Source of the DNA: Octopus sinensis
Taxonomy: Eukaryota
DNA: 64,000 nucleotides
Assembly: GCF_006345805.1 (NCBI RefSeq)
Contig: NC_043005.1
Coordinates: 42,532,001 to 42,596,000 of the forward strand
Direction of reading: 5' to 3'
Both the position numbers and the translations under genes were made by a program. The notes beneath the pieces are model-generated. The model ran no database searches, was not told the origin of the DNA, and saw only the letters and a list, made by a program, of their open reading frames with translations. Below, piece by piece: positions 8,273 to 54,584 of this stretch; position 1 is the stretch's first letter; the number at the start of each line of letters is the position of its first letter.

Positions 8273-8658
8273 GGGAAGCACTCCGTCGGTTACGACGACG
8301 CGGGTTCCGGTTGATCCGAATCAACGGAACAGCCTGCTCGTGAAATTAACGTGTAAGTGGCTGAGCACTCCACAGACACGTGTACCCTTAACATAGTTCT
8401 CGGGGATATTCAGCGTGACACAGAGAGTGACAAGGCCGGCCCTTTGAAATACAGGTACAACAGAAACAGGAAGTAAGAATGAGAGAAAGTTGTGGTGAGA
8501 GAGTACAGCAGGGATCACCACCATCCCCTGCCGGAGCCTCGTGGAGCTTCGGGTGTTTTCGCTCAATAAACACTCACAACACCCGGTCTGAGAATAGAAA
8601 CCGCGATCCTATGACCGCGAGTCCGCTGCCCTAACCACTGGGCCATTGCGCCTCCACT
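8273..8658 (-). mobile_element. SINE family B, full length with TSD
   Basis: 10-bp TSD GTATATAACT at 8263-8272 and 8659-8668. Highly similar to the copies at 4084 and 48975. Confidence 0.9.
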
Positions 8659-10450: not shown

Positions 10451-11232
10451 TCGATTTCACTTCTCAGATCTCACGATTTTACTTGCTCCGGTTAATTTTG
10501 TAAGAGCGGAGAGTAACATGTATTTAATGGTACCACGGGGTCTCTTTTTCCCCGTTACTTAACACCCAAGTAATCCTCGCTCTCCCAAATAGTGCAGTTT
10601 TCTGTGTGTGTGTTCTACGCTCAAGTCAATTCCAATAATATCTCCAAATATTAGGTTGTCCCAAAAGTTCGTAAACACTTGCGAAAATTGAATTTTTACT
10701 CGCCAAGTACTAACAAAAACAACAAAAATTATTCCTCAAAATAAAGACCATTATTTTCCAAGACTTTCTACGAACTTTTGGGACAACCTTATATTTTCTC
10801 AAACCTGTTTGTTAGTGAACCCGGTGCCCCAACAACTATTGGGTTTACAGTTTCTTTCTTCATTACCCACATTCGTGTAATTTCGTCATTTTGTAGCTTA
10901 TACTTTTCAATCTTTTCCAGCTCTTGGTCCCCAACACGGGCGTCCCCATGTATAGTAATATTTATTATCTTGGCTTCCTTCTTACAATCATCCACTGCAA
11001 AAATGTTTGGTTTCCGAGAATCATTTAGTAAATCCAGTTCGGTTGTAAAATCCCACAAGACCTTATACTTGTTATTCGCGTTGATGCCTTCTGATTTATG
11101 CTCGTACCATTTCTGTGTTCTTTCAAGACCATACTTCTCACACAACCTCCAGTGAACAATCTTAGTTACATTATCATGTCCCCTCTTGTATGGCGATTGG
11201 GCCAGTTTGATACACTCACTCACTATACGTCT
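10421..11232 (-). mobile_element. 3' end of an R4/Dong-type (restriction-like endonuclease) non-LTR retrotransposon
   Basis: ORF 10789-11250 has IVSECIKLAQSPYKRGHD (knuckle/RHD region), RKPNI (decayed PD motif) and ELEKIEKY. It resumes after a MITE as QKTALFGRARI, then a 3'UTR ending in an (AAT)n tail at ~10420-10450. Confidence 0.85.
10651..10791. mobile_element. 141-bp mariner-type MITE inserted in the LINE
   Basis: TIRs TTAGGTTGTCCCAAAAGTTCGTA and TACGAACTTTTGGGACAACCTTA, with TA on both sides (10649-50, 10792-93). Confidence 0.85.
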
Positions 11233-11852
11233 GTACATACATACATACATACATACAATCCATCGCTGGAATTGTAAAAATCTGAGAAACTTTCCAGAAG
11301 TTTGTCATTTAAATATATATGAGCATGTCTAGATATGTAACTCTATGCATAACAATACATACATAAAACATATGAATCTGCACATACATACATACATACA
11401 TACATACATACATACATACATACATACATACATACATACATACATACATACAATCCATCGCTGGAATTGTAAAAATCTGAAAAACTTTCCAGAAGTTTAT
11501 CATTTAAATATATATGAGCATGCCTAGGTATGTAACACTATGCATGAGAATACATACATAAAGCATACAAATCTTCACATACATACATACATACATACAA
11601 CATACATACATACATACATACATACATACATACATACATACACACATACACACATACACACATACACACATGCATACATACATACATACATACATACATA
11701 CATACATACATACATACATACATACATACATACATACATACAAACAAAATCACCCTGTTGTTGATATTGAAATTCCAATGAAGGAACCTTGGATCTAGGT
11801 TAAAAACCGGTTCTTTCTTTATTGGCAAGAAATCTTGAAATAAACTGAATAA

Positions 11853-18038: not shown

Positions 18039-18274
18039 CCATTTCTTTACTACCCACAAGGGGCTAAACACAGAGGGGATAAACAAGGACAGACAAACGG
18101 ATTAAGTCGATTATATCGACCCCAGTGCATAACTGGTACTTAATTTATCGACCCCAAAAGGATGAAAGGCAAAGTCGACCTCGGCGGAATTTGAACTCAG
18201 AACGTAACGGCAGACGAAATACGCCAACGCATTTCGCCCGGCGTGCTAACGTTTCTGCCAGCTCACCGCCTTAT
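18039..18274 (-). mobile_element. SINE family C1 with TSD
   Basis: TSD ATTAAGTGCC at 18029-18038 and 18275-18284. Confidence 0.9.
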
Positions 18275-27539: not shown

Positions 27540-28009
27540 ACTGCATCTAATACTAATGCTATTGCAGCTGCTGTTGCTGCTGTTGTTGCTGCTGCTTATG
27601 TCTCCTGATAATGTGGAAAATGCTTTTGCTGTTGTCACTGTTTTTCTTGTTACCATCAAGGTTTCATGAAACGCCAAAAACGTATTATCGTTGTTTAAGC
27701 ACAGGCCAACCCTGATTGACTAGAACATAATAACTAAAGCGTTCCAGCTGTGACCATCCTGCATGTTTCCTCCATTCATGGAACAACTCTGGTACTACGC
27801 ATTCAACTTTTGTCATTTCATTACGATTATATGCTGATTTAAAGGAGACATGATTGCTATTTCTAGCAAATGGAGTGACTACATCGTTACGTCTTCTTAG
27901 TGCATCAGACAACTCTGTTGCTTCTGCTCTTAATGCCGCAGTTGTTAGTGTTTCACCTATTATCTCGCGCTCATTTTTCATTCTTGATGATTTAGCTGCT
28001 GTGTCAAAA

Positions 28010-28300
<291 letters not shown>

Positions 28301-28361
28301 TATTGGGCTTCGTATATTTTACCCCAGTGTCACTTTGATGGCATGCACTGCTCTTTCACTC

Positions 28362-32867: not shown

Positions 32868-33606
32868 CACGGGGGTTGGACAAAATAATGGAAACACCTT
32901 AAAATTTCAAACAAATTTATTTTAATATGGGGTAGGTCCGCCTTTAGCAGTAATTACAGCTTGAATTCTACGAGGTATGGACTTATACAAAGTTCGAATT
33001 GCTTCCAAAGGGATTTTTGTCCATTCTTCAGCTAAAACAGTCTCCAGTTCTTCTAGTGATGGTGGAGGAAATCGACTCCTTACTTGTTTTTCTAAAATGC
33101 ACCATAAATGTTCAATAATATTAAGATCTCGGGACTTTGGTGGCCAGAAAAGATATTCAACTTTACCAGAATGTTCCTCGTACCATTCAGTAACAACTTT
33201 AGCTGTGTGAATTGGTGCATTATTATCCTGAATGATAGCGTTTCCCACCGAAAATAGTTCCACAACCACATGATGAACTTGATCAGATAAAATATGAAAG
33301 GAAACCATTGGGCCGACAGATTTCCAAGATATAGTCACCCCACCCCAGATCATCACAGATCCTCCTCCATGTTAAACAGTTAGAAGAAGGCAGTATGGGT
33401 CAAATGCTTCTTTTGGCTCTCTGTCCACACGTATACTCGGCCGGTGGTCGGAAATAAGGTAAAAGGTGACTCGTCCGGGAAAATAACATTATTCCACTGC
33501 TCTGGGGACCAATTCTGTAGGTTTTTACTCCACTCTAAACACTTTGCAACGTTTGTTTTTGAAAGCAGTGGTTTTCTGATTGCAGCCTTCTCGTGAAATC
33601 CGGTTT
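32868..33606 (-). mobile_element. Tc1-family transposase remnant with 3' TIR
   Basis: IFPDES (first D), HGGGSVMIWG, QDNNAPIH and WPPKSRDLNIIEHLW ... AKGGPTPY. A TIR-like CACGGGGGTTGGACAAAATAATGGAAACACC lies at 32868 next to (TA)n. Confidence 0.9.
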
Positions 33607-33954
33607 TGTGCCAAATTTTAAAGCTAATATGTATATCTAATATAAGGCGGGGAGCTGGCAGAGCCGTAATCTTTCCGGCATTTCGTTACAACTTTACGTT
33701 CTGAATTCAAATTCTGCCGAGGTCAACTTTCCTTTATGGGGTCGATGAAAGAAATACCAGCTTAGCACTGGGGCCATGTAATTGGCTTGCCTCTTCCTCT
33801 AAGATTTCAGACTTAATGTATATCTATTACAGAAGAGAAAAAAGATTTCAGACTTAATGTATATCTATTACAGAAGAGAAAAAAGAATTGCATGATTCAA
33901 ACGCTATGTCTCTCCTAAACTGTATTGCCGTATTGCGCGCGTGTGTGTGTGTCT

Positions 33955-34165
33955 GTGTCTGTCTGTGTCTGTCCCCACCACCATCGCTTAACAACCAATG
34001 CTGGTGAGTTTACTTCCCCGTAACTAAGCAGTTCGGATAAAGAGACCGTTAGAATAAGTACTAGGCTTACAAAGAATAAGTCCTGAGGTCGATTTGTTCG
34101 ACTAAACACGCTGCTCCAGCATGGCAGCAGTCAAATGACTGAAACAAATAAAAGAATAAAAGAAT
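33955..34165 (+). mobile_element. SINE A 3' half
   Basis: Matches the tail of the 17462 copy. Confidence 0.75.
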
Positions 34166-34190
34166 ATATATATACATACATATATGTATA

Positions 34191-34245
<55 letters not shown>

Positions 34246-34252
34246 AATAATT

Positions 34253-34336
<84 letters not shown>

Positions 34337-34559
34337 TATATATATATGCATATGTACACACACACACACACACACATGTAATATGCATATATGAGTACAG
34401 GACGTCACAGACCGAAAACAACATGAAATATGAAAACAAAGGAGTTAAATACATAAAGAACGACAGAAATAAATGAAAAATAGGACAAGTAACATCAAGA
34501 AAGACCCTTCATCAGTTGTCGACTGTCCATCTACTCTTCATTTCCACTTACCAACAACA

Positions 34560-35107: not shown

Positions 35108-35192
<85 letters not shown>

Positions 35193-35211
35193 CATACATG
35201 TATCTATCTGT

Positions 35212-35624
35212 CTCTGCACGCAATCGTGCAGTGTCCAGCAATTTCCCACCTGTGGGCTTATGTCGAACGACTGCTGTCACGTGTGGGACGAGTCGGTTTA
35301 TCAGCCGAGTCTATCGTTAATATCGTCACGCCTCCTTCCTTCAAACGGGAAGGAAGAGCTATTTTTATCATACTTGTGGCTATGGCGAAAGAATGTATCT
35401 GGTAGACGCGCCTGAAAGGATTAGAGACAAACACTTTCCTCTCTGGTCAATCTCTCATCAACTTCTTCAAGTATCACTTGAAGAAAAAAGTGAGAGTAGA
35501 GAGGCAAGTTTTGTCTAGTGAATGTTTTAAAAAAAGATGGGTGAATGTAGCAAGGATGGCACGTATGAATGACGAAGCCACCTTGACTATGATTCTATGA
35601 ACCGTAAAAATTAATACAGAGAGT
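35212..35624 (+). mobile_element. L1/Tx1-clade LINE ORF2 C-terminus, cut by a MITE at the left inversion breakpoint
   Basis: Frame 35214-35600 reads LHAIVQCPAISHLWAYVERLL...AMAKECIW*TRLK...FFKYHLKKKVRVERQVLSSECFKKRW...MIL*, with one internal stop. It fits the HxxxxC / AKxxIW / FxxRW pattern. Confidence 0.75.
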
Positions 35625-36511
35625 GGATCTTTTCAATTCTGAAGCCAGTTTTTTCAAATTTTTCCTACTGAACCAAACAATTTGAAACTTCGTATACTGG
35701 TAGAATGTGTCAAAAGTAAACTTAATTGTAAACCAGAATGAAAACGGAATTGTAACTTCTAAGTTTAACGTTGTTTAATAATTAGAATTTTAACCAATGA
35801 TATTCCGTCATTCGGCTTTATTTTATTTACTCCGTCTCGACCACCAATTTCGTGACGTATTAAACATCTTAAATGTAAACAAGCCGCATGTCTCCGTGAA
35901 ATCTCCTTCTAATTATTTAACGTACTCATGTTTCCAGGATCCTATAGTCAGCCACCTTCTAATAACAATATTTAAAACTAGTTAATAAGCCACATGTATT
36001 AAATTGAAAATGTTTCCATTCTGTTAGTACTTGCTTTCGTTTGCTTTTAAGAAGTGGCATCTCAGTGACGAGGCTTCTAACAAGATTTCGTTTTTAAGCT
36101 AATGCGTTTCATTTCACTTATTGTATTTATTTGTGCAAAAGGCAAGAATTTAATATTAAAAAAGCAAAGAGCTGGCAGAAACGTTAGCACGCCGGGCGAA
36201 ATGCGTAGCCGTATTTCGTCTGCCGTTACGTTCTGTGTTTGTTTACAGTTTTCCGAACGTTAGTACGTCACAAAAGCGCTTTCTACGTCACACTAATAGA
36301 ATGCAGTCAAGTTTTACACATGAAAACAAACAATCTGATTGGTTAAAATTCGCAGTTTTAATCTACGATTAAAGTCATAAAATAGATTTTTCTCAAATAA
36401 ACTAGTTCCAACCTGTGTCTTGTTTTGCTAGACTCTATCAGCATACGAAGTTTCAGAATATTTAGTTAAGTAGAAAGATCTGTGGTCCTGGCTTCAGAAT
36501 TGAAAAGATCC
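35625..36511 (+). mobile_element. MITE copy A (887 bp, 24-bp TIRs)
   Basis: TIRs GGATCTTTTCAATTCTGAAGCCAG and CTGGCTTCAGAATTGAAAAGATCC. Near-identical to the inverted copy at 47696-48574. Confidence 0.95.
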
Positions 36512-36596
36512 GTAATTCGTAATTATATGTGCGCATGTTCATGTATGTATGTATGTATGTATGTATGTATGTATGTATGTATGTATGTATGTATGT

Positions 36597-36643
<47 letters not shown>

Positions 36644-36930
36644 ACACATATATGTATGTGTATACAGTCAGAGAGAGAAGGAGAGAGAGAAGAGCCGAGA
36701 TGGTTGAGAACGTTTTTAGGCCTCGAAAGGATACAGAAAAGGCAAAGAAGAATTAAGCATTATTTTTGTCTTCGCTACTATATGGATGTGAGAGCTGTAT
36801 TACTTATAGTAGTCATATGAAAGGACTAAACCGATTTCACCAACATTTTCTCTTCCTTATACTGGTTATCCGATGGCAAATATAAGTGACGCCAAGTCCT
36901 CGAACGCAGCCAGTTTACCAATACAGAGTA

Positions 36931-37417
36931 AAGTGATCCCTCGCTACTTCGCGGTTCAACTATCACGGATTCATGACTTCACAGATTTTAAATATATATA
37001 TATATATGTATGAACGCCTAAAATTTTTTATTGAATCCATTAAAATATTAATAATAAATATTATTTCCTAGTCTAGGAAAATAACAAAAAAGCATATTCA
37101 GGGGTATTCAAACTTAAAACAGGCTGTGATTGGTGCAATGGAGAGAGACGACGAATCACATCTCTCTATTTTGTAATCTGACCCGTGTAACAGTAACAAT
37201 CTTTATTTTTTTAAAATTTAAAGTGTTATTGCTTAACAGTTGTCCTTGTTATTAATAGACGACTGTAATGGATGGGTTGTTAACAGAACAGGGAGTGTTT
37301 TAAAAGTCCAAGTACACGTTAAATAAATACTGTAAATATAGTGTCCCTACTTCGCAGAAATTCAGTTATCGCGGCCGGTCTCGGAACCTTTCTACCGCGG
37401 TAAAAGAGGGATCACTG
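36931..37417. mobile_element. pogo/Tigger-type MITE
   Basis: TA-(A)AGTGATCCCTCGCTACTTCGCGG ... CCGCGGTAAAAGAGGGATCACTG-TA. Confidence 0.8.
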
Positions 37418-37439
37418 TATGTAGTACTTAATCAACAAT

Positions 37440-37905
37440 TACTACCGAATGGTCAGGATAGAAGACGACCTGATCCCCAAGCAATTTCTGATTGGCGAGT
37501 TAGCCCAGATTAAAAGACCTGTACACAAATCAAAATTAAAGTGTTAGGTCAAAATTCTACTAAAAGGATGGGAAAGCCTCTCTCTAGATTGTTCATTGTG
37601 GAACAATACAGTAAAGGATGAGTGGCGGGAATTTGAACAAAGATGTAACGAGCATGAAAAGTTTAGGGGAAATCTTTGTAACGGCCTTGATATTAACTTG
37701 CTTGCGTATATTCCTACCTAGTTTGGTTTAACTTGTAACGAGTATGCATGGGTGGGCGGGCCTTGGAAGTCATCAGCGAAACCATAGAAACAGGAAAGTT
37801 GATAACTATACATTGCACGCTAATTCTACGTGCGGGGAGTCTGGAAAAGAATGTGCATCAGAAAGCAGTCTGAAGCGTCATATGAAATTTTCTCAAAACA
37901 ATACA
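37440..37905 (+). mobile_element. RTE-clade LINE C-terminal remnant with decayed C2H2-like fingers
   Basis: RMVRIEDDLIPKQFLIGELAQIKRP (RTE 'RIPKQLLYGEL' motif), then ...AGLGSHQRNH and CGESGKECASESSLKRHMK. Confidence 0.7.
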
Positions 37906-37912
37906 AACAATG

Positions 37913-38205
37913 TGGAAGCGCAATGGCCCAGTGGTTAGGGCAGCGGATTCGCAATTTCGATTCCCCGACCGGGCGTTGTAAGTGTTTATTGAGCGAAAAC
38001 ACCTAAAGCTCCCAGAGGCTCCGGCAGTGGGTGGTGGGCGACCCCTGTTATACTCTTTCGCCCCCAACTTTCTCTCACTCTCTCTTCCTGTTTCTTGAGT
38101 AAAGCTGCGATGGACTGGCGTCCCGTCTAGCTATGGGCAACACATACGCCACAGAAACCGGGAAACCGGGCCCATGAGCCTGGCTAAGCTTGAAAAGGGC
38201 GCATA
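37913..38205 (+). mobile_element. SINE with family-B head and an alternative tail
   Basis: GGAAGCGCAATGGCCCAGTGGTTAGGGCAGCGG head, B body to ~38095, then GATGGACTGGCGTCCCGTC... Confidence 0.7.
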
Positions 38206-38939
38206 TATAACATTTTTTTAATATACAAACAATACTATAACACTCACTTTACGAAGCATTGCCACTTCTATAACAAAAGAGCAGAACTGGAGGGTCACAC
38301 CTGTGCTGATCATGTTTAAGAGAATAACCAAACAATTGCATTAATCTAATTCAAGTTACAACCATCTTGTATACATGTACGTATATATGTATGTGCATAA
38401 GTCAATGTGTTTCTACATGTATGTGTGTGTATGCATCGTTTTGGTTTCCCACACCGCTTGACAAACTGTGCTGGTGTGTTTACCTTCCCTGGGTAACCGG
38501 TCCTATGAAACCTAGGACTCGAGTGAGATGTATATATGTATATATTTTTAGTCAGGAAGAAGGATATTAATCGAGACTTGTGGGAGGGAGTGAGGAAGGA
38601 TAATATCTAAACCGTAGAACTGGCCCGAATGCTTGTGACACAATAGACTTCGCTAAAGGCAACCAAGGGATCGAGTGTTGTTAAAACGGTTGACGAGTTA
38701 AGTATACTGCTCAAGTTGGATATGGCGAGATTTGAACTCAGAATGCTAAGATAAGGCGAGCTTTGAAGTCAGAGAGCTAAGAGCTAGATCAAATACCACG
38801 TGACAACCTGGCCGATGACCTTTCTTGCCTGCAAGCAAAGATGAGATCTTCCCACAAGCATGTAAATTGTTTTAGAGAAACGGATTCTTTTTTTTTTTAA
38901 ATGATTATTTATTTTCTTCGAGTATAACCAACAATTACC

Positions 38940-39292
38940 TTTTTTCTTTATTACCCACAAGGGGCTAAACATAGAGGGGACAAACAAGGACAGACAAAAG
39001 TATTAAGTCGATTACATCGACCCCAGTGCGTAACTGGTACTTAATTTATCGACTCCGAAAGGATGAAAGGCAAAGTCGACCTCGGCGGAATTTGAACTCA
39101 GAACGTAGCGGCAGACGAACTACGTCTACGCATTTCGCCCGGCGTGCTAACGTTTCTGCCAGCTCGCCGCCTTATTTTGTTTTCTTAAAAGGCAAAGTCG
39201 CCATCGGCAGAATTTGAACTCAGAACATAGGGACGGGCGAAATACCGCTAAGCATTTCGTCCAGCGTGCTAACGATTCTGCCAGCTCGCCGC
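38940..39292 (-). mobile_element. SINE C: extra head fragment plus full C1 inside one TSD
   Basis: 16-bp TSD ATAACCAACAATTACC at 38924-38939 and 39293-39308. Confidence 0.85.
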
Positions 39293-40884
39293 ATAACCAA
39301 CAATTACCGCTAAGTAGCAGGAAATTCCAGTTAGGATTTTTAAAATATTTTTCGTGTCATTCAATGACGTATTTAGTATATTGTTATTATTTAACCCTTC
39401 ATTTTTGTCAATTATTCCAACCGTGACCCACCATTCATATTTATTGCAGACGTCTCCTTTCCATTTTAAAGATGGTAGACAGTGGTTTGAGGGATATTTA
39501 AATACTATTTCTCGTACGTTGAGCAACCACCTAGGGTCTTATAAATAAAAGTAGGGTAAAATTTTAGTGGCCAATAAATTTAACTATACTCAGAAATATG
39601 ACAAAGGTACTTTTGTGCAGATAAATACCTTTACTAAATTATAGAATATAAATAAATCAAAACGGAAGTAAACTGACATTTTTTCATTAAGAAGAAACAA
39701 TTATGTTAACTATTATCGAAGCAAACAGTAATATAGTGATAAATCAATCTAAAATGGTTTTTAATGAAATGTTAATATTTTTTTGATTGGCTTAGACGGC
39801 GAGTTGCCAGAATCGTTAGCACGTCGGGCAGGATACTTAGTAGGATTTCGTCCGTCTTTACATCTTGAGTTCAAACTCCGCCGACGTCGACTTTGCCTTT
39901 CATCCTTCAGGGTCGATAAAATAAGTTCCAGATGGGCACGGGGGTCGATGTAATTATCTTGTTGGCCTTGTGAACACGTAAGTTCATTTCCAACAGTTCG
40001 TCATTGCATAGTCAAGTAGACATAGTAACAGATGATCTTACAGTTCAGTCGATCCATCGCCTCGGATTGATATTTTTCTACAGACCCTGAAAAGGTGAAA
40101 AACAAAATTTGAATATACTTAAATATATTTCCAATTAGAAATATATTCCTGTAAATACAGCGTTGTACCGTTTCAGTACATTGTATTAACCTTAGACATT
40201 TTTCTAAAGATAGAGATATCTGCTGAAAATTTAGAGATAGTCTTAAAAGTCTAAGAAAACACTGTTACGAAGAAAGAGATACATTCCTGTACAGTTAGAA
40301 ACAGCGTTGGAAAGTCACTGACATCGACGTTTTATAACATCTAACTAACCTAACTTTTAACCTAATCATTCGAGAAGCTAATTTAGCTGCTAAATCCTGT
40401 CTCGCATACATCTCTTGTGTATTCATATTTGATGTTCTAATTACCACAACCGCCTGCCAAACACAAATATTCAATGCTTTTCGTCAGAATGCCGATAGTA
40501 CGTAAAGCTTAGATGACATAACTTCGATAAATAGAAAAGAAAAAATAACATTGAAAAATATCAGTAAATCAATTATGATTAATTATAATACAGTCGGACT
40601 AAAAGCATTCAATAATAAAATGTTTAGCTATACAAGTTATCCGTAGACTCCTATTTTTCAACTCAAATTCTCTTTTCGCTCACTAAATTATATCTAAGCT
40701 CTTCTAGAATACTCGTAGGACATTATGAGTATTTGGTTAAGGCAAGGACTTCTCTCTTGGCATGCAATGGTTTACTTCCTGTCACAGAGTTCCACCTGAA
40801 CAAAAGTAAAGGGAAAGTATTGCAAAACTACCATTTTAAGCACAAAAATTGTTGTATTTAACACCATTTGTAAAATATGAAGTA

Positions 40885-41404
40885 CCGTAAATTCTCGAGT
40901 ATAGTCCGCCCTTGAGTATAATACGCAGGGGATTTTTAGGGGCCTGTACTTCTGAAAAACCTAAACCTTGTGTATAATACGCACTCCTTCTCTAACTTGA
41001 GTCGTGCGTAATTAAGCCAGCAGCACCTAGTCAAACAAACACTTCCGCGCATGCGCAATACAATAATGGTGATGTTCTTAACTGTTATATGGGAATGTAA
41101 ATATATTTGCAAATTGTTTTTGTTACGTTATTCTGTGTTCTGAATACTTTTATTTTAATAAATGTTGCTTGCTGCAAGTTATGGATGATTCTTTTATGAC
41201 TTCATTGCTTTCAGGCTTTGCTTAAGGTAATTTCGCCCACGATATCACAAAATGCGTCTAAATAAACATTGCCGGACAGCAAATAGAGACTCGGATATTG
41301 CTTAGAAAACATTTTTTATTTTTAACCTCGTATATAGTACGCACTACGGATTTTGACCTTTAAATTTTTGGGGGAAAATGCGGATTATACTCGAGGATTT
41401 ACGG
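40885..41404. mobile_element. pogo-type MITE (520 bp)
   Basis: TA-CCGTAAATTCTCGAGTATAGTCCGC ... GCGGATTATACTCGAGGATTTACGG-TA. Confidence 0.85.
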
Positions 41405-41724
41405 TACATTCATTTCTTGATTACTCCACATATTTCTTCTGTTCACAAATTTTGCTGAAGCACCACCATATTCTGAATTTTAAAGATGATGAAAAATCAA
41501 ATTTATCATTTAGTACTTAACGCTACCCGCCGAGAGGGCCTCTTTATGTTAACTCCTGCAGACAGAAACAACTATCAAATCTCCCTTCAATCAAAATCTA
41601 TCATCTTAAAAAAAAAAGAAAGAAAAAGACAGACAACGCATATTTCATAATGTATACGGGATGTATACTATATCTGAATAAAAAATAGAAATATAAAAAG
41701 ATGGCATTATTATGTTATTGATTA

Positions 41725-42165
41725 AGGCAGTGAGTTGGTAGAATCGTTAGCACGCTTGGCGAAATACTCAGCAGTATTTCACCGTCGCTTTGTTCTGAGT
41801 TCAAATTCCGCCGAGGTCGACTTTGCCTTTCATCCTTTCGGGGTCGATAAATTAAGTACGAGTTGCGTATTGGGGGTCGATCTAATCGACTGGCCCACCT
41901 CCACCAAAATTTCAGACCTTGTGCCTGGAGTAGAAAAGATTATTATGGTTTTGATTATGGCGGTGAGCTGGCACGCCGGGCGAAGTGTTTAACATTATTT
42001 CACCTGTCACTTCGTTCTGAGTTCAAATTCCACCGAGGTCGACTATGCCTTTCATCCTTTCTGGGTCGATAAATTAAGTACCAGTGAAACACTGAGGTCG
42101 ATGTAATCGACTCGTCCCCTCCCCCAAAATTTCAAGCCTTGTGCCTTTATTAGAAAGAATTATTA
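41725..42165 (+). mobile_element. Two tandem SINE C2 copies
   Basis: Heads at ~41725 and ~41960, each ending in a CCAAAATTTCA..CCTTGTGCC tail. Confidence 0.75.
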
Positions 42166-42880
42166 TACCTTTGATCAATGAAGGCTCTTGCTTAATCAGG
42201 AGCTAAAAAAAAAAATTTCTTTTATCAGTTTCTGATAATCCCCGATCCAACTGTGAAAAGAACAGCTTTTAATGATCCAATGGTAGATCTGACTGAGTCC
42301 TTATGTGGCCGTTCAATTTTCTAGAAATAACAGTCAAGTTTCTCTCAAATCTTTCACATCCGTCTCAAAAGAAATAAGTAAACAATGTAGTCTCCGTATA
42401 AAAATAAAGTGGGAGAGGTTTAAGATCAGATTAACCTTTAACCTTAGATCCACTTAGTCTCGGGTTCCCGAGTTTAAAAAGCAACAATCCGAATATTTTT
42501 CTTGTTAAATTAAACAACTGTGTTAATTAAGACTGAGCGCTTTATGAAGTCACTAATACTTTCGATTTGTATTATAATGAGTTAAAAGGTAACTCGGAAA
42601 ATGTTTTCATCATACCTATGTCTTGGATTTTTTTTTCATTCTATGCAAGTATCTCAAACAAGTTATAAATTATCAGTCATCAGAAGCGATTTTTTTTGCA
42701 AATTCTCCCAGCAATCTGTAGAACTCAATGATTTTCGATAACTGATGCATGAATGGGCAGGGCTTCCGTTTAGAGTTAATGCTAAGTTTTGCAACAATAA
42801 TTTTTCTGCGTTTAATCAGATAAGCAACCACACAAAATGTTTCCTGGAACTTGGCGAAGCAAAGATTCGAAATATTAATA

Positions 42881-43090
42881 GGCGGCGAACTGGCAGAATC
42901 GTTAGCACCCTGGATGAGATGCTTGGCGGCATTTCGTCTCTCTTTACATTCTGAGTTCAAATTCCGCTGAGATCAACTTTGCCTTTCATCTTTTCTGGGT
43001 CGATAAATTAAGTACCAGTGAAACACTGGAGTCGATGTAATCGACTATCCCTCCCACCTGCCAAAAAAAAAATTCAGGTCTTGTGCCTGA
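42881..43090 (+). mobile_element. SINE C2
   Basis: Family similarity. Confidence 0.75.
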
Positions 43091-43091
43091 G

Positions 43092-43440
43092 ACATTTCTC
43101 TGACACTTTGACGTGGGTTTTGTTCAACAGTTGCTTTCAATTGTTCATTGTCAAGACTGAATGATCGTCCACTACCTTCATCTTCAAGGCTCTCATCACC
43201 ATCAGCGGAATTTCTGAAACCACCTTCGTACTGTGCGATCACTTGTGGACCCCTCTCCCCATGCTCTGTTGATACTAGCAGCAATTTGGGAGGCATAATG
43301 CCCAAGCTTGAACTCATGCAAGAAAAGTAAGCGAAGGTCCTTTTTTTGTCATGTTCATAATTAAGGGCGCCTATGCTTCAAGAATGTTTTCTGTCTGAAA
43401 TAAGTAGAAAAATCATTAAGTATGTCGAAATTCACCTAAA
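43092..43440 (-). mobile_element. mariner 5' fragment (N-terminal HTH)
   Basis: DLRLLFLHEFKLGHYASQIAASINRAWGEGSTSDRTVRRWFQKFR, then frameshifted GDESLEDE...LKATVEQNPRQSVRE. Confidence 0.85.
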
Positions 43441-43921
43441 ATATAATTAAAACATTATGATAACATTGCGTTTCAAAGCGCAACATTTAGAGAGGCCATT
43501 ATTTTCGGAATAACCTAATGAAAGTGTTGGTTCAATTTGTTTATACCGATCTTGCAACTCACTACAAACATATGCAATGGACGTCGCCAAGTATTATTTC
43601 TAACATTAAAAACAAGACAAAAAACAAACAAACAAACAAAACGAAGATGAGCCACGAAATGATGTAATTTAAATAAACTTCTTTGAAATGTAATTCCACT
43701 GTGATGTGTCGACTCAGGAGCAGAAGAAAAATCAAATTGATTATGCAATAAAGTGTTTGAATTTATTAAATTGTCCCGCCTCTTCATATCAGCAGAACCA
43801 AAACAGGAGCTCTTGTCATGATTCTTTGAATCTTAGAACCCAGATATGGCCATTGCACTGATACTCGATAAATAATTTTCAAACACTATTGAAAATTTAT
43901 TGATCGTTTATTTTTTTATCT

Positions 43922-44365
43922 TTTAGCTTTTATTGCTTCAGTCATTTCACTGTGGCCATGCTGGATCACCGCGTTGAAAACTTTTTTAGCAGAATGAATT
44001 TTTTGTTTAAAGTATTTTTTGTTTAAAGCCGGTACTTATTTTATCAGTCTTTTTGCCGGACTGCTAAGTTACTGAGGCGTAAAGTTGTCAAGTAGAGGTG
44101 GACAAACACAGACACAAAGCCACACACGTCTCTGCGTGTGTGCGCGCGCGCGAATGCACAAACACACACACACTCACACACACACACATAGATATATATA
44201 TATCTTTTACGACGGGCTTCTTTCAGTTACCATCTACCAAATCCATTCACAAGTCTTCATTCAGCTTGGGGCTATTAGAGAAAATACTTGCTCAAGATCC
44301 CACATAATGGGTCTGAGACTGGAACCATGTGGTTTGGAAGCAAACTTCTTACTACACAGCCAAGC
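43922..44365 (-). mobile_element. SINE A
   Basis: Family similarity. Confidence 0.7.
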
Positions 44366-44914
44366 CTGGGCCTATCATCTACAAACTTAGTGGTGTCGAT
44401 CCTGGAAGAGGGCAGATGATTCCTTGAGTTTCTCCTCAATCGTCTGACATTAATATACCATTCGCTTTAAAATGACTGCAGTTTCCTATAATAAATACCC
44501 AATACATTGATATTTACGAGTTAAAGATACAGTTTCCAGAGGAGGTGTTCGTATCTTCCGGCTCTAGTGTGTTCACACGAGCACTTAAACGCTGCTGCTT
44601 TGCAGATGAGCGCTCCAACAGACCTGTGAATATTCGCCGATCAATTACAATTCACTCCCCTAACCAGAAAGACATGTCATAATGATGAAAGCAGTACGCT
44701 AACTAAAGACGAAGCGGTCATCTAAGCAAATGTAAATATGGATTGGAAATGAAATACTTTTAAAGTATATATTCTATTTAAACAATATCAAAAATTTCTC
44801 CGACCATAGAAAGACAAAATGGAATAGGCAGGGCAAGAGGAAATACATAGGACAGAGAGTCGTTGAAGAGGTTACACAATGTTTGACGAAAGAAATCTAA
44901 CGAACAAATAAGCA

Positions 44915-45367
44915 TTGATTTCAAATTTTGGTACAAGGCCTGCAACTTCGAAGTAGCGGGTAAGTCGATTACATTGATCCTAGTGTTATTTTATCGCCAT
45001 TTTATCGCCAACGAAAAGATGAGAAGCAAAAAGTCGACCTCGGCGGAATTTGAACTCAGAACACGAAGACAGACGAAATGCCGCTGAGGATTGGCCGGGC
45101 GTGCTAACAGATCTGTTAGTTCGCCACCTTAACGGAGAAAATAAATATTTGCATCAAATTGTGACAAAAAGGCCAGCACTTTTGGAAGAAGAGGTAAGTC
45201 GATTACATCGACCCCGGTGTTTAACTGGATGGTATTTATTTTATCGACCCTGAAAGGATGAAAGGCCAAGTTGACCTCAGAGGAATTTGAACTCAGAATG
45301 TAAAAACAGACGAAATGCCGCTAAGCATTTTTCGCCCGGCGTGCTAACGATTCTACCAGCTCACCAC
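44915..45367 (-). mobile_element. Two tandem SINE C copies
   Basis: Family similarity. Confidence 0.7.
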
Positions 45368-45403
45368 ATTGACGGACAAAACAAATATTAAAACATTATT
45401 TTG

Positions 45404-45929
45404 TTGTGTCTGGGGAGAGTCATTCTCTTTTAGTACCTTATTATTTAACACACTCACCGTTAAAATTTCCACTTATTTCGTCTTTTTATTTTCCTAAAAT
45501 TTTCGTTGCGTCTTGCAACCTTTTCAATAGTCTTGACTCTCAAGGAAAATAAAAAGACGAAATAAGTGGAAATTTTACCGGTGAGTGTGTTAAATAATAT
45601 AAGGTACTAAAAGAGAATGACTCTCCCCAGACACAATAGAATATGCTTCAACACACGAACTCATATAAAGAATCTTGCAAACCAAATCCAAAAACAAAAC
45701 ATTATTTATTAAACATTAACTGAAACCCCAACCCCTCAATAAGTTTCAATAATTTTCCGAATCATGAATGTGCCTAAACACTGATAACTATCTGAATCTT
45801 ACAGTGATTCTTTGTTATTTGAACTCGGTGTACTTTATGTTATCTTAAATGTAGCATTTGAAATAGACAAACAATTCAAAATTTAAATGCTTGCTTTTGC
45901 CGTCAGCAAAGCGACGGGTAACAGACTAG
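45404..45929 (+). mobile_element. Non-autonomous Helitron-like 3' fragment with an inverted duplication (45404-45636)
   Basis: Subterminal hairpin CCGTC(A)GC-AAA-GCGACGG, then CTAG (45926-29) followed by T. Inverted arms of ~92 bp lie upstream. Confidence 0.6.
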
Positions 45930-46610
45930 TATATATAAAGAAGACGAAAAAAAAAAAAAGAAGAAAAACACGGCGTTAGAGATAAATAGTAAGAAAGCTA
46001 TTAAGATTTTGTCTCAAAGGAAAGGCTCGTTTGTTTTGTTATTCGCGACTGGTTCGCTTATTTTATTATTGTATGTTTGTGCAAATTTAAGTATTTTTTC
46101 TTGTTATCCTATCGTAAATAGTGCGTTTTGACTTATTTAGGCCCCTTTAAGAGAGCACCACAATAGGCGGCGAACTGCTGCTTGAAATAAGAGATAAATA
46201 AGTAAAATCAGATTATAAATCAGATGGACAGTTTGATGTTTAATGGTGAAGGGGAGGACGGAGGTGCGGGGAGGTATACAACAATATTTAGATAAAGATT
46301 ACTTGACACATTCCCCCTCCTCTTTCTCCTGCTGACGCCTCTGCTTGCCTAACGCCACAACCACTACTACCATTACCGCGATCTCCGCCGCTACCACCAC
46401 CACCACCACCACCACCACCACCACCACATTCGCCGCCACCACCACCACCGTCGCCGCTACGGTAATGAAAAGCAGCAAGAGAAAAGGACAAAAAGGAAAA
46501 AAAAAAAAAGGAAAAAGAAGGAAAAAAAAAGTTTACGTTGTTGTAATTCATATTAATTGCGACTACGTAAAACTTAACAACAGGCGCGCGAGTATGCGTA
46601 GCCTTGTACG

Positions 46611-46653
<43 letters not shown>

Positions 46654-46681
46654 CGTGTGTGTGTGTGTGCGTGTGTGTATA

Positions 46682-46880
46682 TTCTCTTATTTGCTTCAAT
46701 CATTTTACTGCAGCCATGCTGGAGCACCACCTTTATTCAAACAAATCGACTCTCAGGACTTATTCTTTATAAGCCTAGTACTTATACAATTGGTTCCTTT
46801 TACCGAACCGCTAAGTCACGGGGACGTAAACACACCAATATCGGTTGCCAAGCGATAGTGGGGGTACAAAACAAGAAACA
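46682..46880 (-). mobile_element. SINE A 3' half
   Basis: Family similarity. Confidence 0.7.
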
Positions 46881-47248
46881 AAATCACACACACATACATA
46901 CATATATTTGGCTCCGCCTCTGTTCTGTTTTTGTTTTTTCCAACGTATTTCCTATTTCTTCCTGAAGAGACAGACACAATATGGTCTCCTTATTCAATCG
47001 GAATTTGGTAAATTGTGCCTTTCGAAACACGTGTAGAATGCAATAAAACGATTTCTGTTCAATCTTCGTTCAACTCCATTTCTTCAATTCACTAATAATA
47101 TTAAAATTCAATTATCCGCACCAACGCACGGTTGCAACACCATATGGTTGTACCTCCAACCGTGCTGTCTTCTGCTGTGATTTTTGCTACCAAGGTAACG
47201 GTTAAACTTTTGATTAATCTGCAACAAGATTATTCATCTTTCTATTTC

Positions 47249-47295
<47 letters not shown>

Positions 47296-47320
47296 ATATA
47301 TATAATATATATACCGTTTA

Positions 47321-47351
<31 letters not shown>

Positions 47352-47354
<3 letters not shown>

Positions 47355-47695
47355 TCTTTATTAGCCACACAGGGCTGCACACAGATAGAACAAATTACAA
47401 GGTAGAGCTTTTCTTTTGGGGTAAAAAAAAGGGGGTGGTGGTTTTCGATCAAAAGGGATCGTAAAAGGAAAGAAAGAGGACAAAAAAAAGGGAGGGGTTA
47501 AAAAGGGGGGGGGGGCAAAAAAAATGAATAATAGGGATCGTTATCACAGGAATGTCAATATGAAGTGTAAAGGGGAGGACAGGTGAGGTTTACCCGTGGA
47601 AAGAAAAGCCTACGGAAAAGACCACGGTAACCTCGGTCAATGAAGTCACATGTTATATTTCTTTTTTTTTTTTTTTGCAAATAAGCAACTCTCTG
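47352..47695 (-). mobile_element. Probable 3'UTR of the Tx1-like LINE, displaced to the right inversion breakpoint
   Basis: On the minus strand it begins with CAGAGAGT, the TSD partner of 35617-35624. It ends ...GTGGCTAATAAAGAAACAT at (TA)n. Confidence 0.65.
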
Positions 47696-48574
47696 GGATC
47701 TTTTCAATTCTGAAGCCAGGACCACAGATCTTTCTACTTAACTAAATATTCTGAAACTTCGTATGCTGAGCAAAACAAGACACAGGTTGGAACTAGTTTA
47801 TTTGAGAAAAATCTATTTTATGACTTTAATCGTAGATTAAAACTGCGAATTTTAACCAATCAGATTGTTTGTTTTCATGTGTAAAACTTGACTGCATTCT
47901 ATTAGTGTGACGTAGAAAGCGCTTTTGTGACGTACTAACGTTCGGAAAACTGTAAACAAACACAGAACGTAACGGCAGACGAAATACGGCTACGCATTTC
48001 GCCCGGCGTGCTAACGTTTCTGCCAGCTCTTTGCTTTTTTAATATTAAATTTCTTGCCTTTTGCACAAATAAATACAATAAGTGAAATGAAACGCATTAG
48101 CTTAAAAACGAAATCTTGTTAGAAGCCTCGTCACTGAGATGCCACTTCTTAAAAGCAAACGAAAGCAAGTACTAACAGAATGGAAACATTTTCAATTTAA
48201 TACATGTGGCTTATTAACTAGTTTTAAATATTGTTATTAGAAGGTGGCTGACTATAGGATCCTGGAAACATGAGTACGTTAAATAATTAGAAGGAGATTT
48301 CACGGAGACATGCGGCTTGTTTACATTTAAGATGTTTAATACGTCACGAAATTGGTGGTCGAGACGGAGTAAATAAAATAAAGCCGAATGACGGAATATC
48401 ATTGGTTAAAATTCTAATTATTAAACAACGTTAAACTTAGAAGTTACAATTCCGTTTTCATTCTGGTTTACAATTAAGTTTACTTTTGACACATTCTACC
48501 AGTATACGAAGTTTCAAATTGTTTGGTTCAGTAGGAAAAATTTGAAAAAACTGGCTTCAGAATTGAAAAGATCC
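47696..48574 (-). mobile_element. MITE copy B (879 bp), inverted relative to copy A
   Basis: Same 24-bp TIRs. The length difference from A is explained by a 9-bp deletion and a 1-bp insertion. An identical 62-aa spurious ORF appears in both copies. Confidence 0.95.
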
Positions 48575-48974
48575 CGAATTACATTGCTTCAATCATGTTG
48601 AAATACGAGTGAAATGCAGAAATAAGATTCTGTAAGAGAATATTTAGAACAATATAAACTCCGCCAATACTAATACAAGATGAAGTTAAAGATAAAGATG
48701 GAAACAAGCAGATTGCTTGGTCGTGAGAAAATAACTTCGGAGTTGGTGGAGCGGAACGGAAATGTAGCGTAGTAAGGTTCGCTGAGGACGTCAGTGGTTC
48801 AGTACTATAATTGTGCCGGAAGTGATTCAATTGTAATATACATGTTAAGGATGTTGTCTGTCAGCATGTGAGTGAGATTTATTATCATTTTTTTTTTTCA
48901 TACGAGAATATATTTGGGTATATGAGTGTATGTGTGTGTATATGAGTGAGTGTAAATATTATAGAAATGGATGG

Positions 48975-49347
48975 ATGGAAGCACTCCGTCGGTTACGACG
49001 ACGAGGGTTCCGGTTGATCCGAATCAACGGAACAGCCTGCTCGTGAAATTAACGTGTAAGTGGCTGAGCACTCCACAGACATGTGTACCCTTAACGTAGT
49101 TCTCGGGGATATTCAGCGTGACACAGAGAGTGACAAGGCCGGCCCTTTGAAATACAGGTACAACAGAAACAGGAAGTAAGAGTGAGAGAAAGTTGTGGTG
49201 AAAGAGTACAGCAGGGATCACCACCATCCCCTGCCGGAGCCTCGAGGAGCTTTAGGTGTTTTCGCTCAATAAACACTCACAACGCCCGGTCTGGGAATCG
49301 AAATCGCGAGACCGCTGCCCTAACCACTGGGCCATTGCGCCTCCACA
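48975..49347 (-). mobile_element. SINE family B with probable TSD
   Basis: Flanks ATTATAGAAAT and ATTACAGAAAT. Confidence 0.85.
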
Positions 49348-49577
49348 TTACAGAAATACAGAAACGGTGAGAAAGTGGAGTGACAAAAACTATGTATTCC
49401 ACTTATGAATAGTGTTGCATTGGGCACTCGTTATTTCTGGCATTACTTTTACTTAAAGCGCAAAGGAATTTAGAGCCTCATTTAGTTAATTAGACTGTTT
49501 AAGGAACATGATAGTAGTTTTACTTACGATGTATAAATTGCACGTTTAATTTAATTTTTGGTTTGTTGATACTGATT

Positions 49578-52830: not shown

Positions 52831-53524
52831 GAATAGCGGGGATTGGTTTCTCCATCCTCTCTTTTTTCCGAAAAACGTAACGAGTTTGCAGCATATTAGG
52901 AGGTCAGGGTACTTGATTTCCGAGTTGTTTTTTTTCTTTTTCTTAGTGAAAATCGTACAGGTGAAAGAATCAAATAATACCAACATTTTTGCTGAAATAA
53001 AAGCGTTTAACTAGATCTCTTGTAATCTCTGGAAGAGACTGGAAACCATCACCTATGTGTTGTATTACTACTTCTCAACACCCACGTCTACTGGGCCACC
53101 GAAGCAGCAATGATAATACGAGGGAATGACCAAGAAATTGAAGCGGCTCGAAGTGTCTATATTGGTCATAGGTAGTATATGCAGTCTCTGCTGAGTGAAG
53201 CAAGTCGCGTGAATAAAAGGTGTGAGTAAGAGAAAGACTAAGAGCCATAAACTACCCTGTGAAGACACAGCTTTTGAAGTGATATTCGGTGACGGAGAGA
53301 CCGATATTTCTTAGTGAAAGACGATGATGACACCCAGATGAGATATGTTTCATAGTTCGAAATAGCAAGAGACGATAAATTCAACGACTGCAAACGTAAG
53401 CCACAGTATCTCCCACCCGGCTTGACAGCAAACGACACTTATGACAAGGAGGACAGGAATCACCAGCATCTCATCATGAAGATATTCGTCATCGTTTATG
53501 AAACTGCTCCTTCTCTTTCCCTCA

Positions 53525-53654
53525 CTATCATCATCGTCATCATCATCATCGTCGTCGTAGTCGTCGTTGTCGTCATCATCATCACCATCGTCATCATCAT
53601 CATCATCATCATCATTATCATCATCACCATCATCATCATCATCACCATCGTCAC

Positions 53655-53689
<35 letters not shown>

Positions 53690-54364
53690 CCATCGTCATC
53701 ATCATCATCATCATCATCACCATCATCATCATCACCATCGTCACCATCGTCGTCATCATCATCATCATCATCATCACCATCGTCATCATCATCATCATCA
53801 TCATCACCATCATCATCATCACCATCGTCACCATCGTCGTCATCATCATCACCATCATCATCATCACCATCGTCACCATCGTCATCATCATCATCATCAT
53901 CATCATTATCCTCAATATCAGTCTCCGCGTCGCGCTCCTCCCCTTCCTCCTTCTCTTCTCCTCATCATCAACATCCCCATCCTCCCCATTATCATCATCA
54001 ACATCCACATCCTCCTCATCCTCATCATCATTCTCCTCGCATTCCTCCTCTTCCTCCTCTTCCTCTTATTCCTCCTCCTCTTCCTCCTCTTCTACCTCCT
54101 CTTCCTCCTCTTTTTCCTCCTCTTCCTCCTCCTCCTTCTCATCTTCCTCCTCCTACTCATTATCATCATAAACATCCACATCCTCCTCATCCTCATCATC
54201 ATTCTCCTCGCATTCCTCCTCTTCCTCCTCTTCCTCTTATTCCTCCTCCTCTTCCTCCTCTTCCTCCTCCTCTTCCTCCTCCACCTCCTCATTATCATCA
54301 CCCTCGTCGTCATCGCCGTTATCATCATGATCATCATCATCAACATCGTCATCGTCATCATCAC

Positions 54365-54396
<32 letters not shown>

Positions 54397-54440
54397 CCAC
54401 CATCATCATCATCATCATCATCATCATCACCGACAGCAAC
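53525..54440. repeat. Long degenerate (ATC)n/(TCC)n low-complexity tract
   Basis: Direct inspection. Source of the 249-, 170- and 295-aa homopolymeric ORFs. Confidence 0.95.
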
Positions 54441-54584
54441 AACATCAACACTAACAGCAACGGCAAAGACTGTTAGAGGGAAGCTATAACAACAGCAACT
54501 TCAAAAATACCCTTTTACAATAACCTCGAAAGTAGCAATAAAAAGTAACAACAATGGCGATATGACTACGATGACAACAGCAGC

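What the first reader, a model, noticed from the sequence alone, without database searches (positions are those of the whole stretch)
35617..48582. 11,184-bp inversion between two inverted MITE copies, shown by swapped 8-bp TSDs
Copy A is flanked by CAGAGAGT (35617-24) and GTAATTCG (36512-19). Copy B is flanked by ACTCTCTG (47688-95) and CGAATTAC (48575-82). Neither copy has matching flanks, but A-left is the reverse complement of B-left, and A-right is the reverse complement of B-right. This is exactly t1[A]rc(t2)...rc(t1)[B]t2, expected if each MITE made its own 8-bp TSD and 36512-47695 was then flipped, by ectopic recombination or by alternative transposition. Near-identical copies imply a recent and possibly polymorphic or recurrently flipping segment.
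Basis: partly seen in the sequence, partly recalled or inferred. Interest (0 to 1): 0.85.

Follow-up and report, generated by a model that had tools for sequence, protein, structure and literature searches.

The report
Transposon-flanked 11-kb inversion in octopus
Two almost identical copies of a small non-coding DNA transposon sit in opposite orientation 11 kb apart on an Octopus sinensis chromosome with their 8-bp insertion scars swapped, the textbook footprint of a recent transposon-mediated inversion of a gene-free stretch: a clean example of a well-known process, not a new one.

Summary
Copy A (35625-36511, 887 bp) and copy B (47696-48574, 879 bp) are inverted. They have no substitutions and two indels, and perfect 24-bp terminal inverted repeats. 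The flanks are CAGAGAGT[A]GTAATTCG and ACTCTCTG[B]CGAATTAC. Each flank of A is the exact reverse complement of the same-side flank of B, over exactly 8 bp, with a joint chance of about 5e-10. This geometry excludes an inverted duplication, a composite transposon and reversed-ends transposition. It fits an inversion of 36512-47695. Two routes give this pattern: ectopic recombination between two insertions, or one-step hybrid-element insertion from a single donor. The usual test, chimeric versus identical copies, fails because the copies carry no substitutions. The window is O. sinensis CM016867.1:42,532,001-42,596,000, from a gap-free long-read contig. The segment holds only SINEs, microsatellites and transposon debris. 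I found no host gene. Zero substitutions imply an age of about 0.5 My or less, younger than the split from O. vulgaris. No reads or related assembly could be reached, so mis-orientation in the assembly, polymorphism and the ancestral order remain untested. This is a new member of a known kind, of modest interest.

The parts
35617..35624 (+). t1, outer copy of the first target-site duplication (CAGAGAGT), left flank of copy A
35625..36511 (+). Copy A of a non-autonomous TIR DNA transposon (887 bp, 34% GC, longest open frame 70 aa). It carries the ancestral 9 bp TAGACTCTA near element position 806.
35625..35648 (+). 24-bp terminal inverted repeat GGATCTTTTCAATTCTGAAGCCAG (left end of A). The same sequence is present as reverse complement at 36488-36511, as direct sequence at 47696-47719 and as reverse complement at 48551-48574.
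36169..36239 (+). 71-bp fragment of the abundant SINE family, embedded in the element (element positions 545-615). The matching part of copy B is 47959-48029.
36512..36519 (+). rc(t2): inner copy of the second target-site duplication (GTAATTCG), right flank of copy A
36512..47695 (.). 11,184-bp segment inferred to be inverted relative to its ancestral orientation. It contains SINE copies, microsatellites and short protein-like frames with no Pfam match. No Pfam domain, Rfam family or tRNA was found.
47688..47695 (+). rc(t1): inner copy of the first target-site duplication (ACTCTCTG), left flank of copy B
47696..48574 (-). Copy B of the same element (879 bp), inverted relative to A. It has 0 substitutions against A, a 9-bp deletion and a 1-bp longer A-run.
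48575..48582 (+). t2, outer copy of the second target-site duplication (CGAATTAC), right flank of copy B

Best explanation
A genuine, evolutionarily recent inversion of about 11.2 kb on Octopus sinensis chromosome CM016867.1 (about 42,568,512-42,579,695). It was produced by non-allelic (ectopic) homologous recombination between two very young, oppositely oriented insertions of the same 0.88-kb non-autonomous DNA transposon. Shown: the two copies, their inverted orientation, their perfect TIRs, and the exact exchange of two different 8-bp duplications. Inferred: one copy inserted at ...AAAATTAATA-CAGAGAGT-TGCTTATTTGC... and the other at ...CACATATAATTA-CGAATTAC-ATTGCTTCAATC.... The second was possibly a local hop from the first, which would explain the identity. 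Each insertion made its own 8-bp duplication. A crossover inside the 0.88 kb of homology then flipped everything between them. That carried the inner duplication of each copy to the other copy, while all four element/flank junctions stayed intact. The segment carries no detectable gene, so the event is probably neutral.
For: The flanks are exchanged exactly and over exactly 8 bp at both pairs, with a joint chance of about 5e-10. The copies are inverted and 100% identical at substitution level over 878 bp, which makes them an efficient recombination substrate. Exchanged TSDs on inverted copies are the published expectation for ectopic recombination. [quoted passage not shown] Natural precedents (the Galileo inversions) were resolved in favour of ectopic recombination. 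The window is a gap-free stretch of a PacBio long-read assembly, and an 0.88-kb repeat is easily spanned by such reads. TIR superfamilies with 8-9-bp TSDs were recently active in the sister species.
Against: The feature that proves recombination, chimeric copies, cannot be shown, because the copies differ by no substitution. The route needs three recent events (two insertions and a crossover) where the hybrid-element route needs two. No non-inverted chromosome, empty site or read was available. Nothing inside the window records the ancestral orientation: no older repeat spans the rebuilt sites, and strand skew is uninformative.
Confidence: 0.5

Rival explanations
1. One-step hybrid-element insertion (aberrant or sister-chromatid transposition). 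A single element sat at site t1. After replication, transposase paired the left end of one sister copy with the right end of the other and inserted this hybrid element into site t2, 11 kb away on the same chromatid. This creates the second copy, the second 8-bp duplication and the inversion together.
For: Working the reaction through gives X t1[E]rc(t2) rc(Y) rc(t1)[rc E] t2 Z, which is exactly the window pattern (my derivation, noted). [quoted passage not shown] Here there are 0 substitutions in 878 bp. The route needs fewer events. From general knowledge, aberrant transposition targets are typically local for P and Ac/Ds elements.
Against: Identity is equally expected for two very young insertions. 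The copies do differ by two indels, which must then be later mutations or assembly errors. Such events are documented mainly in laboratory P-element and maize Ac/Ds systems, and no natural animal case is established in the papers read. No autonomous partner or transposase of this family was seen.
Confidence: 0.33
2. Assembly artefact. Both elements are ordinary insertions with matching TSDs, and the assembler placed the 11-kb unique segment between the two identical inverted repeats in the wrong orientation. Alternatively, the animal is heterozygous and only one arrangement was reported.
For: Flipping a segment between identical inverted repeats leaves all four junctions intact, and so produces exactly this pattern. 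The assembly is an early PacBio plus Hi-C build, with 20,491 contigs and 86% of the sequence in chromosome-scale scaffolds. The 1-bp A-run difference between the copies looks like a long-read consensus error.
Against: There are no gaps in the 64-kb window. The repeat is only 0.88 kb, far shorter than long reads, so each copy should be spanned by many reads joining its true flanks. Hi-C scaffolding does not reorient sequence inside a contig.
Confidence: 0.1
3. Another origin of the pair: an inverted duplication of copy A with its flanks, a composite (macro)transposon made of both copies plus the 11 kb, reversed-ends transposition between two elements, or chance resemblance of the flanks.
For: Two identical inverted copies close together could suggest a duplication or a composite element.
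Against: An inverted duplication of t1-A-rc(t2) would put CGAATTAC to the left of B and ACTCTCTG to its right, the opposite of what is seen. A composite transposon needs matching outer flanks, but CAGAGAGT and CGAATTAC differ. Reversed-ends transposition leaves a new matching TSD at the junctions. Chance is about 5e-10.
Confidence: 0.02
4. A segment that flips recurrently, in the germline or somatically, between the two identical inverted repeats.
For: There are 0.88 kb of perfect inverted homology 11 kb apart. From general knowledge, recurrent toggling is known for much larger human inverted duplications.
Against: One assembly gives one state only. There is no recombinase, regulatory element or gene in or next to the segment that would suggest selection for switching. 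The homology is short for frequent NAHR.
Confidence: 0.05

Closest known systems
Galileo (P-superfamily) inversions 2j, 2q7 and 2z3 of Drosophila buzzatii (Caceres 1999; Casals 2003; Delprat 2009, PMC2775673)
   Same: Two copies of one cut-and-paste transposon in opposite orientation at the two breakpoints. Each is flanked by non-matching duplications, which are the reverse complements of the partner's. The inference of ectopic recombination is the same.
   Different: The Galileo inversions are megabase-scale, cytologically visible and polymorphic, with 7-bp TSDs and long TIRs. Non-inverted chromosomes with single target copies were sequenced, and the copies were shown to be chimeric. Here the segment is 11 kb, the TSDs are 8 bp and the TIR is 24 bp. 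No standard arrangement is available, and the copies are too alike to test chimerism.
Hybrid-element insertion of P elements, and sister-chromatid or alternative transposition of Ac/Ds
   Same: Ends from two sister copies of one element insert nearby, giving an inversion flanked by identical inverted copies with exchanged TSDs (legend to Figure S1A). The local target and 8-bp TSD also match.
   Different: These were demonstrated in laboratory crosses with a known transposase source. Here neither a transposase nor a progenitor chromosome is known.
Reversed-ends transposition inversions at maize p1/p2 (Sharma et al. 2021, PMC8225341)
   Same: A class II element with an 8-bp TSD generates inversions of tens of kb, with elements at the breakpoints.
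   Different: RET leaves a newly made, matching 8-bp TSD at the inversion junctions, with one element inside and one outside the inversion. The window shows two different duplications, each split between the copies.
Intramolecular replicative transposition of bacterial insertion sequences such as IS26 (from general knowledge; not checked here)
   Same: It gives the identical formal outcome: a second, inverted copy, an inverted intervening segment, and both 8-bp duplications split and reverse-complemented.
   Different: It is a prokaryotic copy-in mechanism, and no such replicative pathway is established for animal TIR transposons.
Human inversions between inverted segmental duplications or Alu/L1 pairs (NAHR)
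   Same: Homologous recombination between inverted repeats flips the intervening DNA. Human-chimpanzee inversions mediated by LINEs and SINEs are cited.
   Different: Those repeats are retroelements or large duplications, some with proven recurrence. Here the repeat is a young DNA transposon and the event is known from a single observation.

Membership tests
Transposon-mediated inversion by ectopic recombination | Homologous TE copies in opposite orientation at both breakpoints | tested here: met
   Copies at 35625-36511 and 47696-48574 are inverted and align over 878 bp with 0 substitutions.
Transposon-mediated inversion by ectopic recombination | Exchanged TSDs: each copy has unlike flanks, and each flank is the reverse complement of the same-side flank of the partner | tested here: met
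   CAGAGAGT/GTAATTCG against ACTCTCTG/CGAATTAC, matching over exactly 8 bp. The criterion is quoted.
Transposon-mediated inversion by ectopic recombination | Both copies are reciprocal chimeras of two parental copies | tested here: inconclusive
   There are no substitution differences and only two indels, with no third family member for comparison.
Transposon-mediated inversion by ectopic recombination | Non-inverted chromosomes carry one copy of each target sequence, or both elements with matching TSDs | not testable with these tools
   No other octopus assembly or reads could be reached.
Hybrid-element insertion (aberrant transposition from one donor site) | Exchanged TSDs with the two flanking copies identical, and no flanking deletion or duplication | tested here: inconclusive
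   There are 0 substitutions but two indels. Absence of a deletion or duplication cannot be judged without the progenitor sequence.
Reversed-ends (alternative) transposition between two elements | A new, matching TSD flanking the element termini at the inversion junctions | tested here: not met
   No pair of termini has matching direct flanks.
MITE (miniature inverted-repeat transposable element) | Terminal inverted repeats and a target-site duplication | tested here: met
   The TIR is a perfect 24 bp, and the subterminal arms are about 78% alike over about 90 bp. Two 8-bp TSDs can be reconstructed.
MITE (miniature inverted-repeat transposable element) | No coding capacity | tested here: met
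   The longest open frame is 70 aa. The 62-aa internal ORF has no homologue among 5.8 billion proteins.
MITE (miniature inverted-repeat transposable element) | Length below about 800 bp and high copy number | tested here: not met
   The copies are 887 and 879 bp, against the <800 bp limit used. Only two copies lie in the 64 kb, and the genome-wide copy number cannot be tested. 'Non-autonomous TIR transposon' is the safer name.
hAT superfamily | 8-bp TSD | tested here: met
   Both duplications are exactly 8 bp. The length is shared with P (7-8 bp) and, from memory, with Merlin (8-9 bp) and some Mutator-like elements.
hAT superfamily | Characteristic termini (YARNG, from memory) and relation to a hAT transposase | tested here: inconclusive
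   The termini read GGATC...GATCC, which does not fit the remembered hAT or P consensus, and a GG start is more like Merlin or MULE. The consensus was recalled, not looked up. No autonomous partner is available. The superfamily is left unassigned.

The most novel reading that the evidence does not exclude
The inversion was made in one step by aberrant (hybrid-element or sister-chromatid) transposition of a currently or very recently mobilised non-autonomous DNA transposon in the octopus germline. That would be a natural, unselected example of alternative transposition reshaping a cephalopod chromosome. It would imply a live transposase source in O. sinensis within the last ~0.5 My.
Probability: 0.33. 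Interest if true: 0.45.

Novelty: new member of a known kind. Interest (0 to 1): 0.3.

Why it matters
Cephalopod genomes are unusually repeat-rich and rearranged, and transposons are often invoked as the cause, yet base-level footprints of individual events are rarely shown. This locus is an unusually clean one: perfect TIRs, two intact 8-bp duplications exchanged exactly, and no later decay. It dates to after the O. sinensis/O. vulgaris split. It therefore gives a concrete marker that can be assayed by PCR for transposon-driven structural variation in octopus populations. It also indicates that a TIR family with 8-bp duplications was mobile very recently. The functional consequence is probably nil, because no host gene was detected in or beside the segment. 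The mechanism class has been known since the Drosophila Galileo work.

Tried and rejected
(1) Internal proof of ancestral contiguity. I rebuilt both empty sites and four control joins and searched the window for any older repeat spanning a junction. None was found for any of them.

(2) Orientation memory. GC and AT skew of the segment lie within the spread of other 11-kb windows. The ~730-bp direct repeats left of A, which have an inverted partner at 46.7 kb, belong to a dispersed family present in both orientations. Inverted pair I5 (37909-38037 / 49221-49349) has a spacing of 11,183 bp that looked suspicious, but it is one of four copies of a SINE.

(3) Host gene spanning a breakpoint. Pfam scans of the 20 most protein-like frames found only a Tc1/mariner remnant at 32.9-33.7 kb. 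There were no Rfam or tRNA hits.

(4) Other copies, empty sites or orthologous loci. Exact look-ups of five window ORFs found nothing. The MITE-internal ORF has no homologue. The Tc1 remnant's best hit is 71% identical and is not from an octopus. The RT-like ORF at 10.8 kb returned only the source chromosome itself. The TIR was absent from the metagenome and prokaryote collections, and empty site 1 from the metagenome collection.

(5) Superfamily assignment from the literature. The papers read give only general rules.

(6) Rejected readings: inverted duplication, composite transposon, reversed-ends transposition and chance. See the rival explanations.
Full report
OBSERVATION

The window carries two copies of one element, A at 35625-36511 (887 bp) and B at 47696-48574 (879 bp), in opposite orientation. 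Aligned, they show no substitution in 878 shared positions and two indels. One indel is a single base in an A-run. The other is a 9-bp block, TAGACTCTA, present in A and absent in B. The version in A aligns without a gap to the element's other arm (family D15), so B carries a deletion.

Each copy ends in the perfect 24-bp inverted repeat GGATCTTTTCAATTCTGAAGCCAG. This sequence occurs nowhere else in the 64 kb, even allowing five mismatches. Beyond the TIR the two arms are about 78% alike for about 90 bp. The element is 34% GC and has no open frame longer than 70 codons. Its 62-aa ORF has no relative among 5.8 billion proteins. At element positions 545-615 it contains a 71-bp piece of the SINE that litters the window. 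It is therefore a non-autonomous TIR transposon, MITE-like but slightly over the usual 800-bp limit.

A-left is the reverse complement of B-left and A-right is the reverse complement of B-right. Both matches stop at exactly 8 bp. GTAATTCG and its complement each occur once in the window, and those two occurrences are the two junction sites. The complement of CAGAGAGT occurs twice. The joint chance expectation is about 5e-10. Even the microsatellite-inflated average for random position pairs gives only about 9e-8. The interval between the copies is 11,184 bp.

WHERE IT IS

A 149-aa ORF at 10.8 kb is on record on a 109.7-Mb contig, namely GCA_006345805.1, CM016867.1. The literature identifies this as the PacBio plus Hi-C assembly of Octopus sinensis. 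The reverse complement of locus L001 matches the window exactly from position 789. The window is therefore CM016867.1:42,532,001-42,596,000. Copy A is at 42,567,625-42,568,511 and copy B at 42,579,696-42,580,574. There is no N in the window, so the whole structure lies inside one long-read contig.

WHAT THE SEGMENT CONTAINS

It contains SINE copies of at least two families, microsatellites and a few short protein-like frames with no Pfam match. Rfam and ARAGORN found nothing. The only recognisable coding remnant nearby is a Tc1/mariner transposase fragment (DDE_3) at 32.9-33.7 kb, left of copy A. No host exon was detected anywhere in the window among the 20 most protein-like frames. The inversion therefore appears to move no gene and to break none.

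WHAT THE GEOMETRY ALLOWS

Write t1 = CAGAGAGT and t2 = CGAATTAC. The window then reads t1[A]rc(t2) ... rc(t1)[B]t2.

- An inverted duplication of A with its flanks would put t2 to the left of B and rc(t1) to its right. This is the opposite of what is seen, so it is excluded.
- A composite transposon would have matching outer flanks, and these do not match. It is excluded.
- Reversed-ends transposition between two elements leaves a new, matching 8-bp duplication at the junctions. It is excluded.

Two routes remain, and both are inversions. In the first, two independent insertions each make a duplication, and a crossover within the inverted homology flips the DNA between them. This is the expectation stated for ectopic recombination. 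In the second, a single element at t1 is replicated. Transposase pairs the left end of one sister copy with the right end of the other and inserts this hybrid element at t2 on the same chromatid. Working the reaction through gives exactly the same string. Delprat et al. note that the outcome is 'strikingly similar' and differs only in that the copies are identical rather than chimeric. From general knowledge, intramolecular replicative transposition of bacterial insertion sequences gives the same formal result, but it has no known counterpart among animal TIR elements.

WHICH ROUTE

The discriminating test, chimerism, fails here because the copies carry no substitution difference. Identity is predicted by hybrid-element insertion. 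It is also expected if B arose as a recent local hop from A, or the reverse, followed by recombination. The 9-bp deletion and the 1-bp run difference could be later mutations, gap-repair errors or consensus errors. They do not discriminate.

Natural precedents that could be resolved favoured recombination. Parsimony, with two events rather than three, favours the one-step route. I put recombination at about 0.5, hybrid-element insertion at about 0.33, an assembly orientation error at about 0.1 and everything else at under 0.1. The combined probability that the sequenced genome really carries a transposon-mediated inversion is about 0.85.

AGE

A repeat study of O. vulgaris equates a Jukes-Cantor distance of 0.09 with 25 My, which is about 0.0036 substitutions per site per My. 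Two copies of 878 bp should then differ by about 6.3 substitutions per My. Observing none bounds their separation at about 0.47 My with 95% confidence, unless gene conversion between the arms has erased differences. That is younger than the split of O. sinensis from O. vulgaris about 2.5 My ago. The sister species should therefore show the non-inverted order and at least one empty site. The same study lists hAT, Mutator, Merlin and MITE families among recently active elements, so recent mobility of an element with an 8-bp TSD is plausible.

SUPERFAMILY

An 8-bp duplication fits hAT and P (7-8 bp) and, from memory, Merlin and some Mutator-like elements. The GGATC...GATCC termini do not match my recollection of the hAT or P terminal consensus. 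No autonomous partner is in the window. I leave the superfamily open.

WHAT COULD NOT BE DONE

No reads and no second octopus assembly were reachable.

- Exact look-ups of five ORFs failed.
- Homology searches returned nothing closer than 71% identity.
- The TIR and empty site 1 were absent from the collections scanned.
- Within the window, no older repeat spans either rebuilt site.
- Strand skew is uninformative.

The inference therefore rests entirely on the flank geometry. That geometry is strong for 'these flanks were once arranged as two ordinary insertion sites'. It is silent on whether the assembly reports the true orientation, and on polymorphism and recurrence.

VERDICT

The finding is real and correctly interpreted. 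It is a clean new instance of a mechanism described in Drosophila, maize, yeast, mammals and bacteria, in a gene-free stretch, and so of modest interest. The most novel reading still open is a natural one-step aberrant transposition in a cephalopod germline.

Noticed in passing
window 32925-33685 (- strand): Remnant of a Tc1/mariner transposase: DDE_3 at E=1e-12, plus a weak HTH_Tnp_Tc3_2 match upstream. The closest proteins in the database are only about 70% identical, and many of the named hits are annotated spider (Trichonephila) Tcb1/Tcb2 transposases.
   Followed up: partly
window 10789-11238 (- strand): 149-aa ORF (P0001), the only gene called in 20 kb of the source record. The best foreign relatives are 42-54% identical unnamed proteins on large ENA contigs, and it has no Pfam domain. 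From its sequence it looks like the C-terminal part of a retroelement protein.
   Followed up: partly
window 36169-36239 and 47959-48029: The transposon carries a 71-bp fragment of the abundant SINE (up to 96% identical to copies at 18194-18264 and 39095-39165). A DNA transposon has therefore captured, or been hit by, a SINE and now spreads that piece.
   Followed up: no
window 37909-38037 and 49221-49349 (also 4275-4470 and 8462-8657): A second SINE family with four copies. The pair at 37.9 and 49.2 kb is 89-92% alike and inverted, with one copy inside and one outside the inverted segment. The spacing of 11,183 bp mimics that of the MITE pair by coincidence.
   Followed up: yes
window 33801-33882: A perfect tandem duplication of a 41-bp unit (100% identity, 2.1 copies), indicating a very recent local duplication.
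   Followed up: no
window 36541-36648: A compound microsatellite, (ATGT)14 followed by (AC)24, starts 29 bp from the right end of copy A. Further long AT, CTAT and TG arrays lie at 34164-34347, 35108-35213, 46612-46678 and 47252-47351. These would complicate primer design at the breakpoints.
   Followed up: no
window 53420-54470 and 27685-28330: Kilobase-scale trinucleotide-type low-complexity tracts that yield long artificial ORFs (poly-Ile/Val/Thr, poly-Ser/Pro, poly-Gln/Asn/Leu) on both strands. They are not genes.
   Followed up: no
window 3004-3429 (- strand): A 142-aa high-complexity frame with no Pfam hit. From memory it resembles the conserved C-terminal region of transposase-derived proteins common in invertebrate genomes. 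This was not verified.
   Followed up: partly
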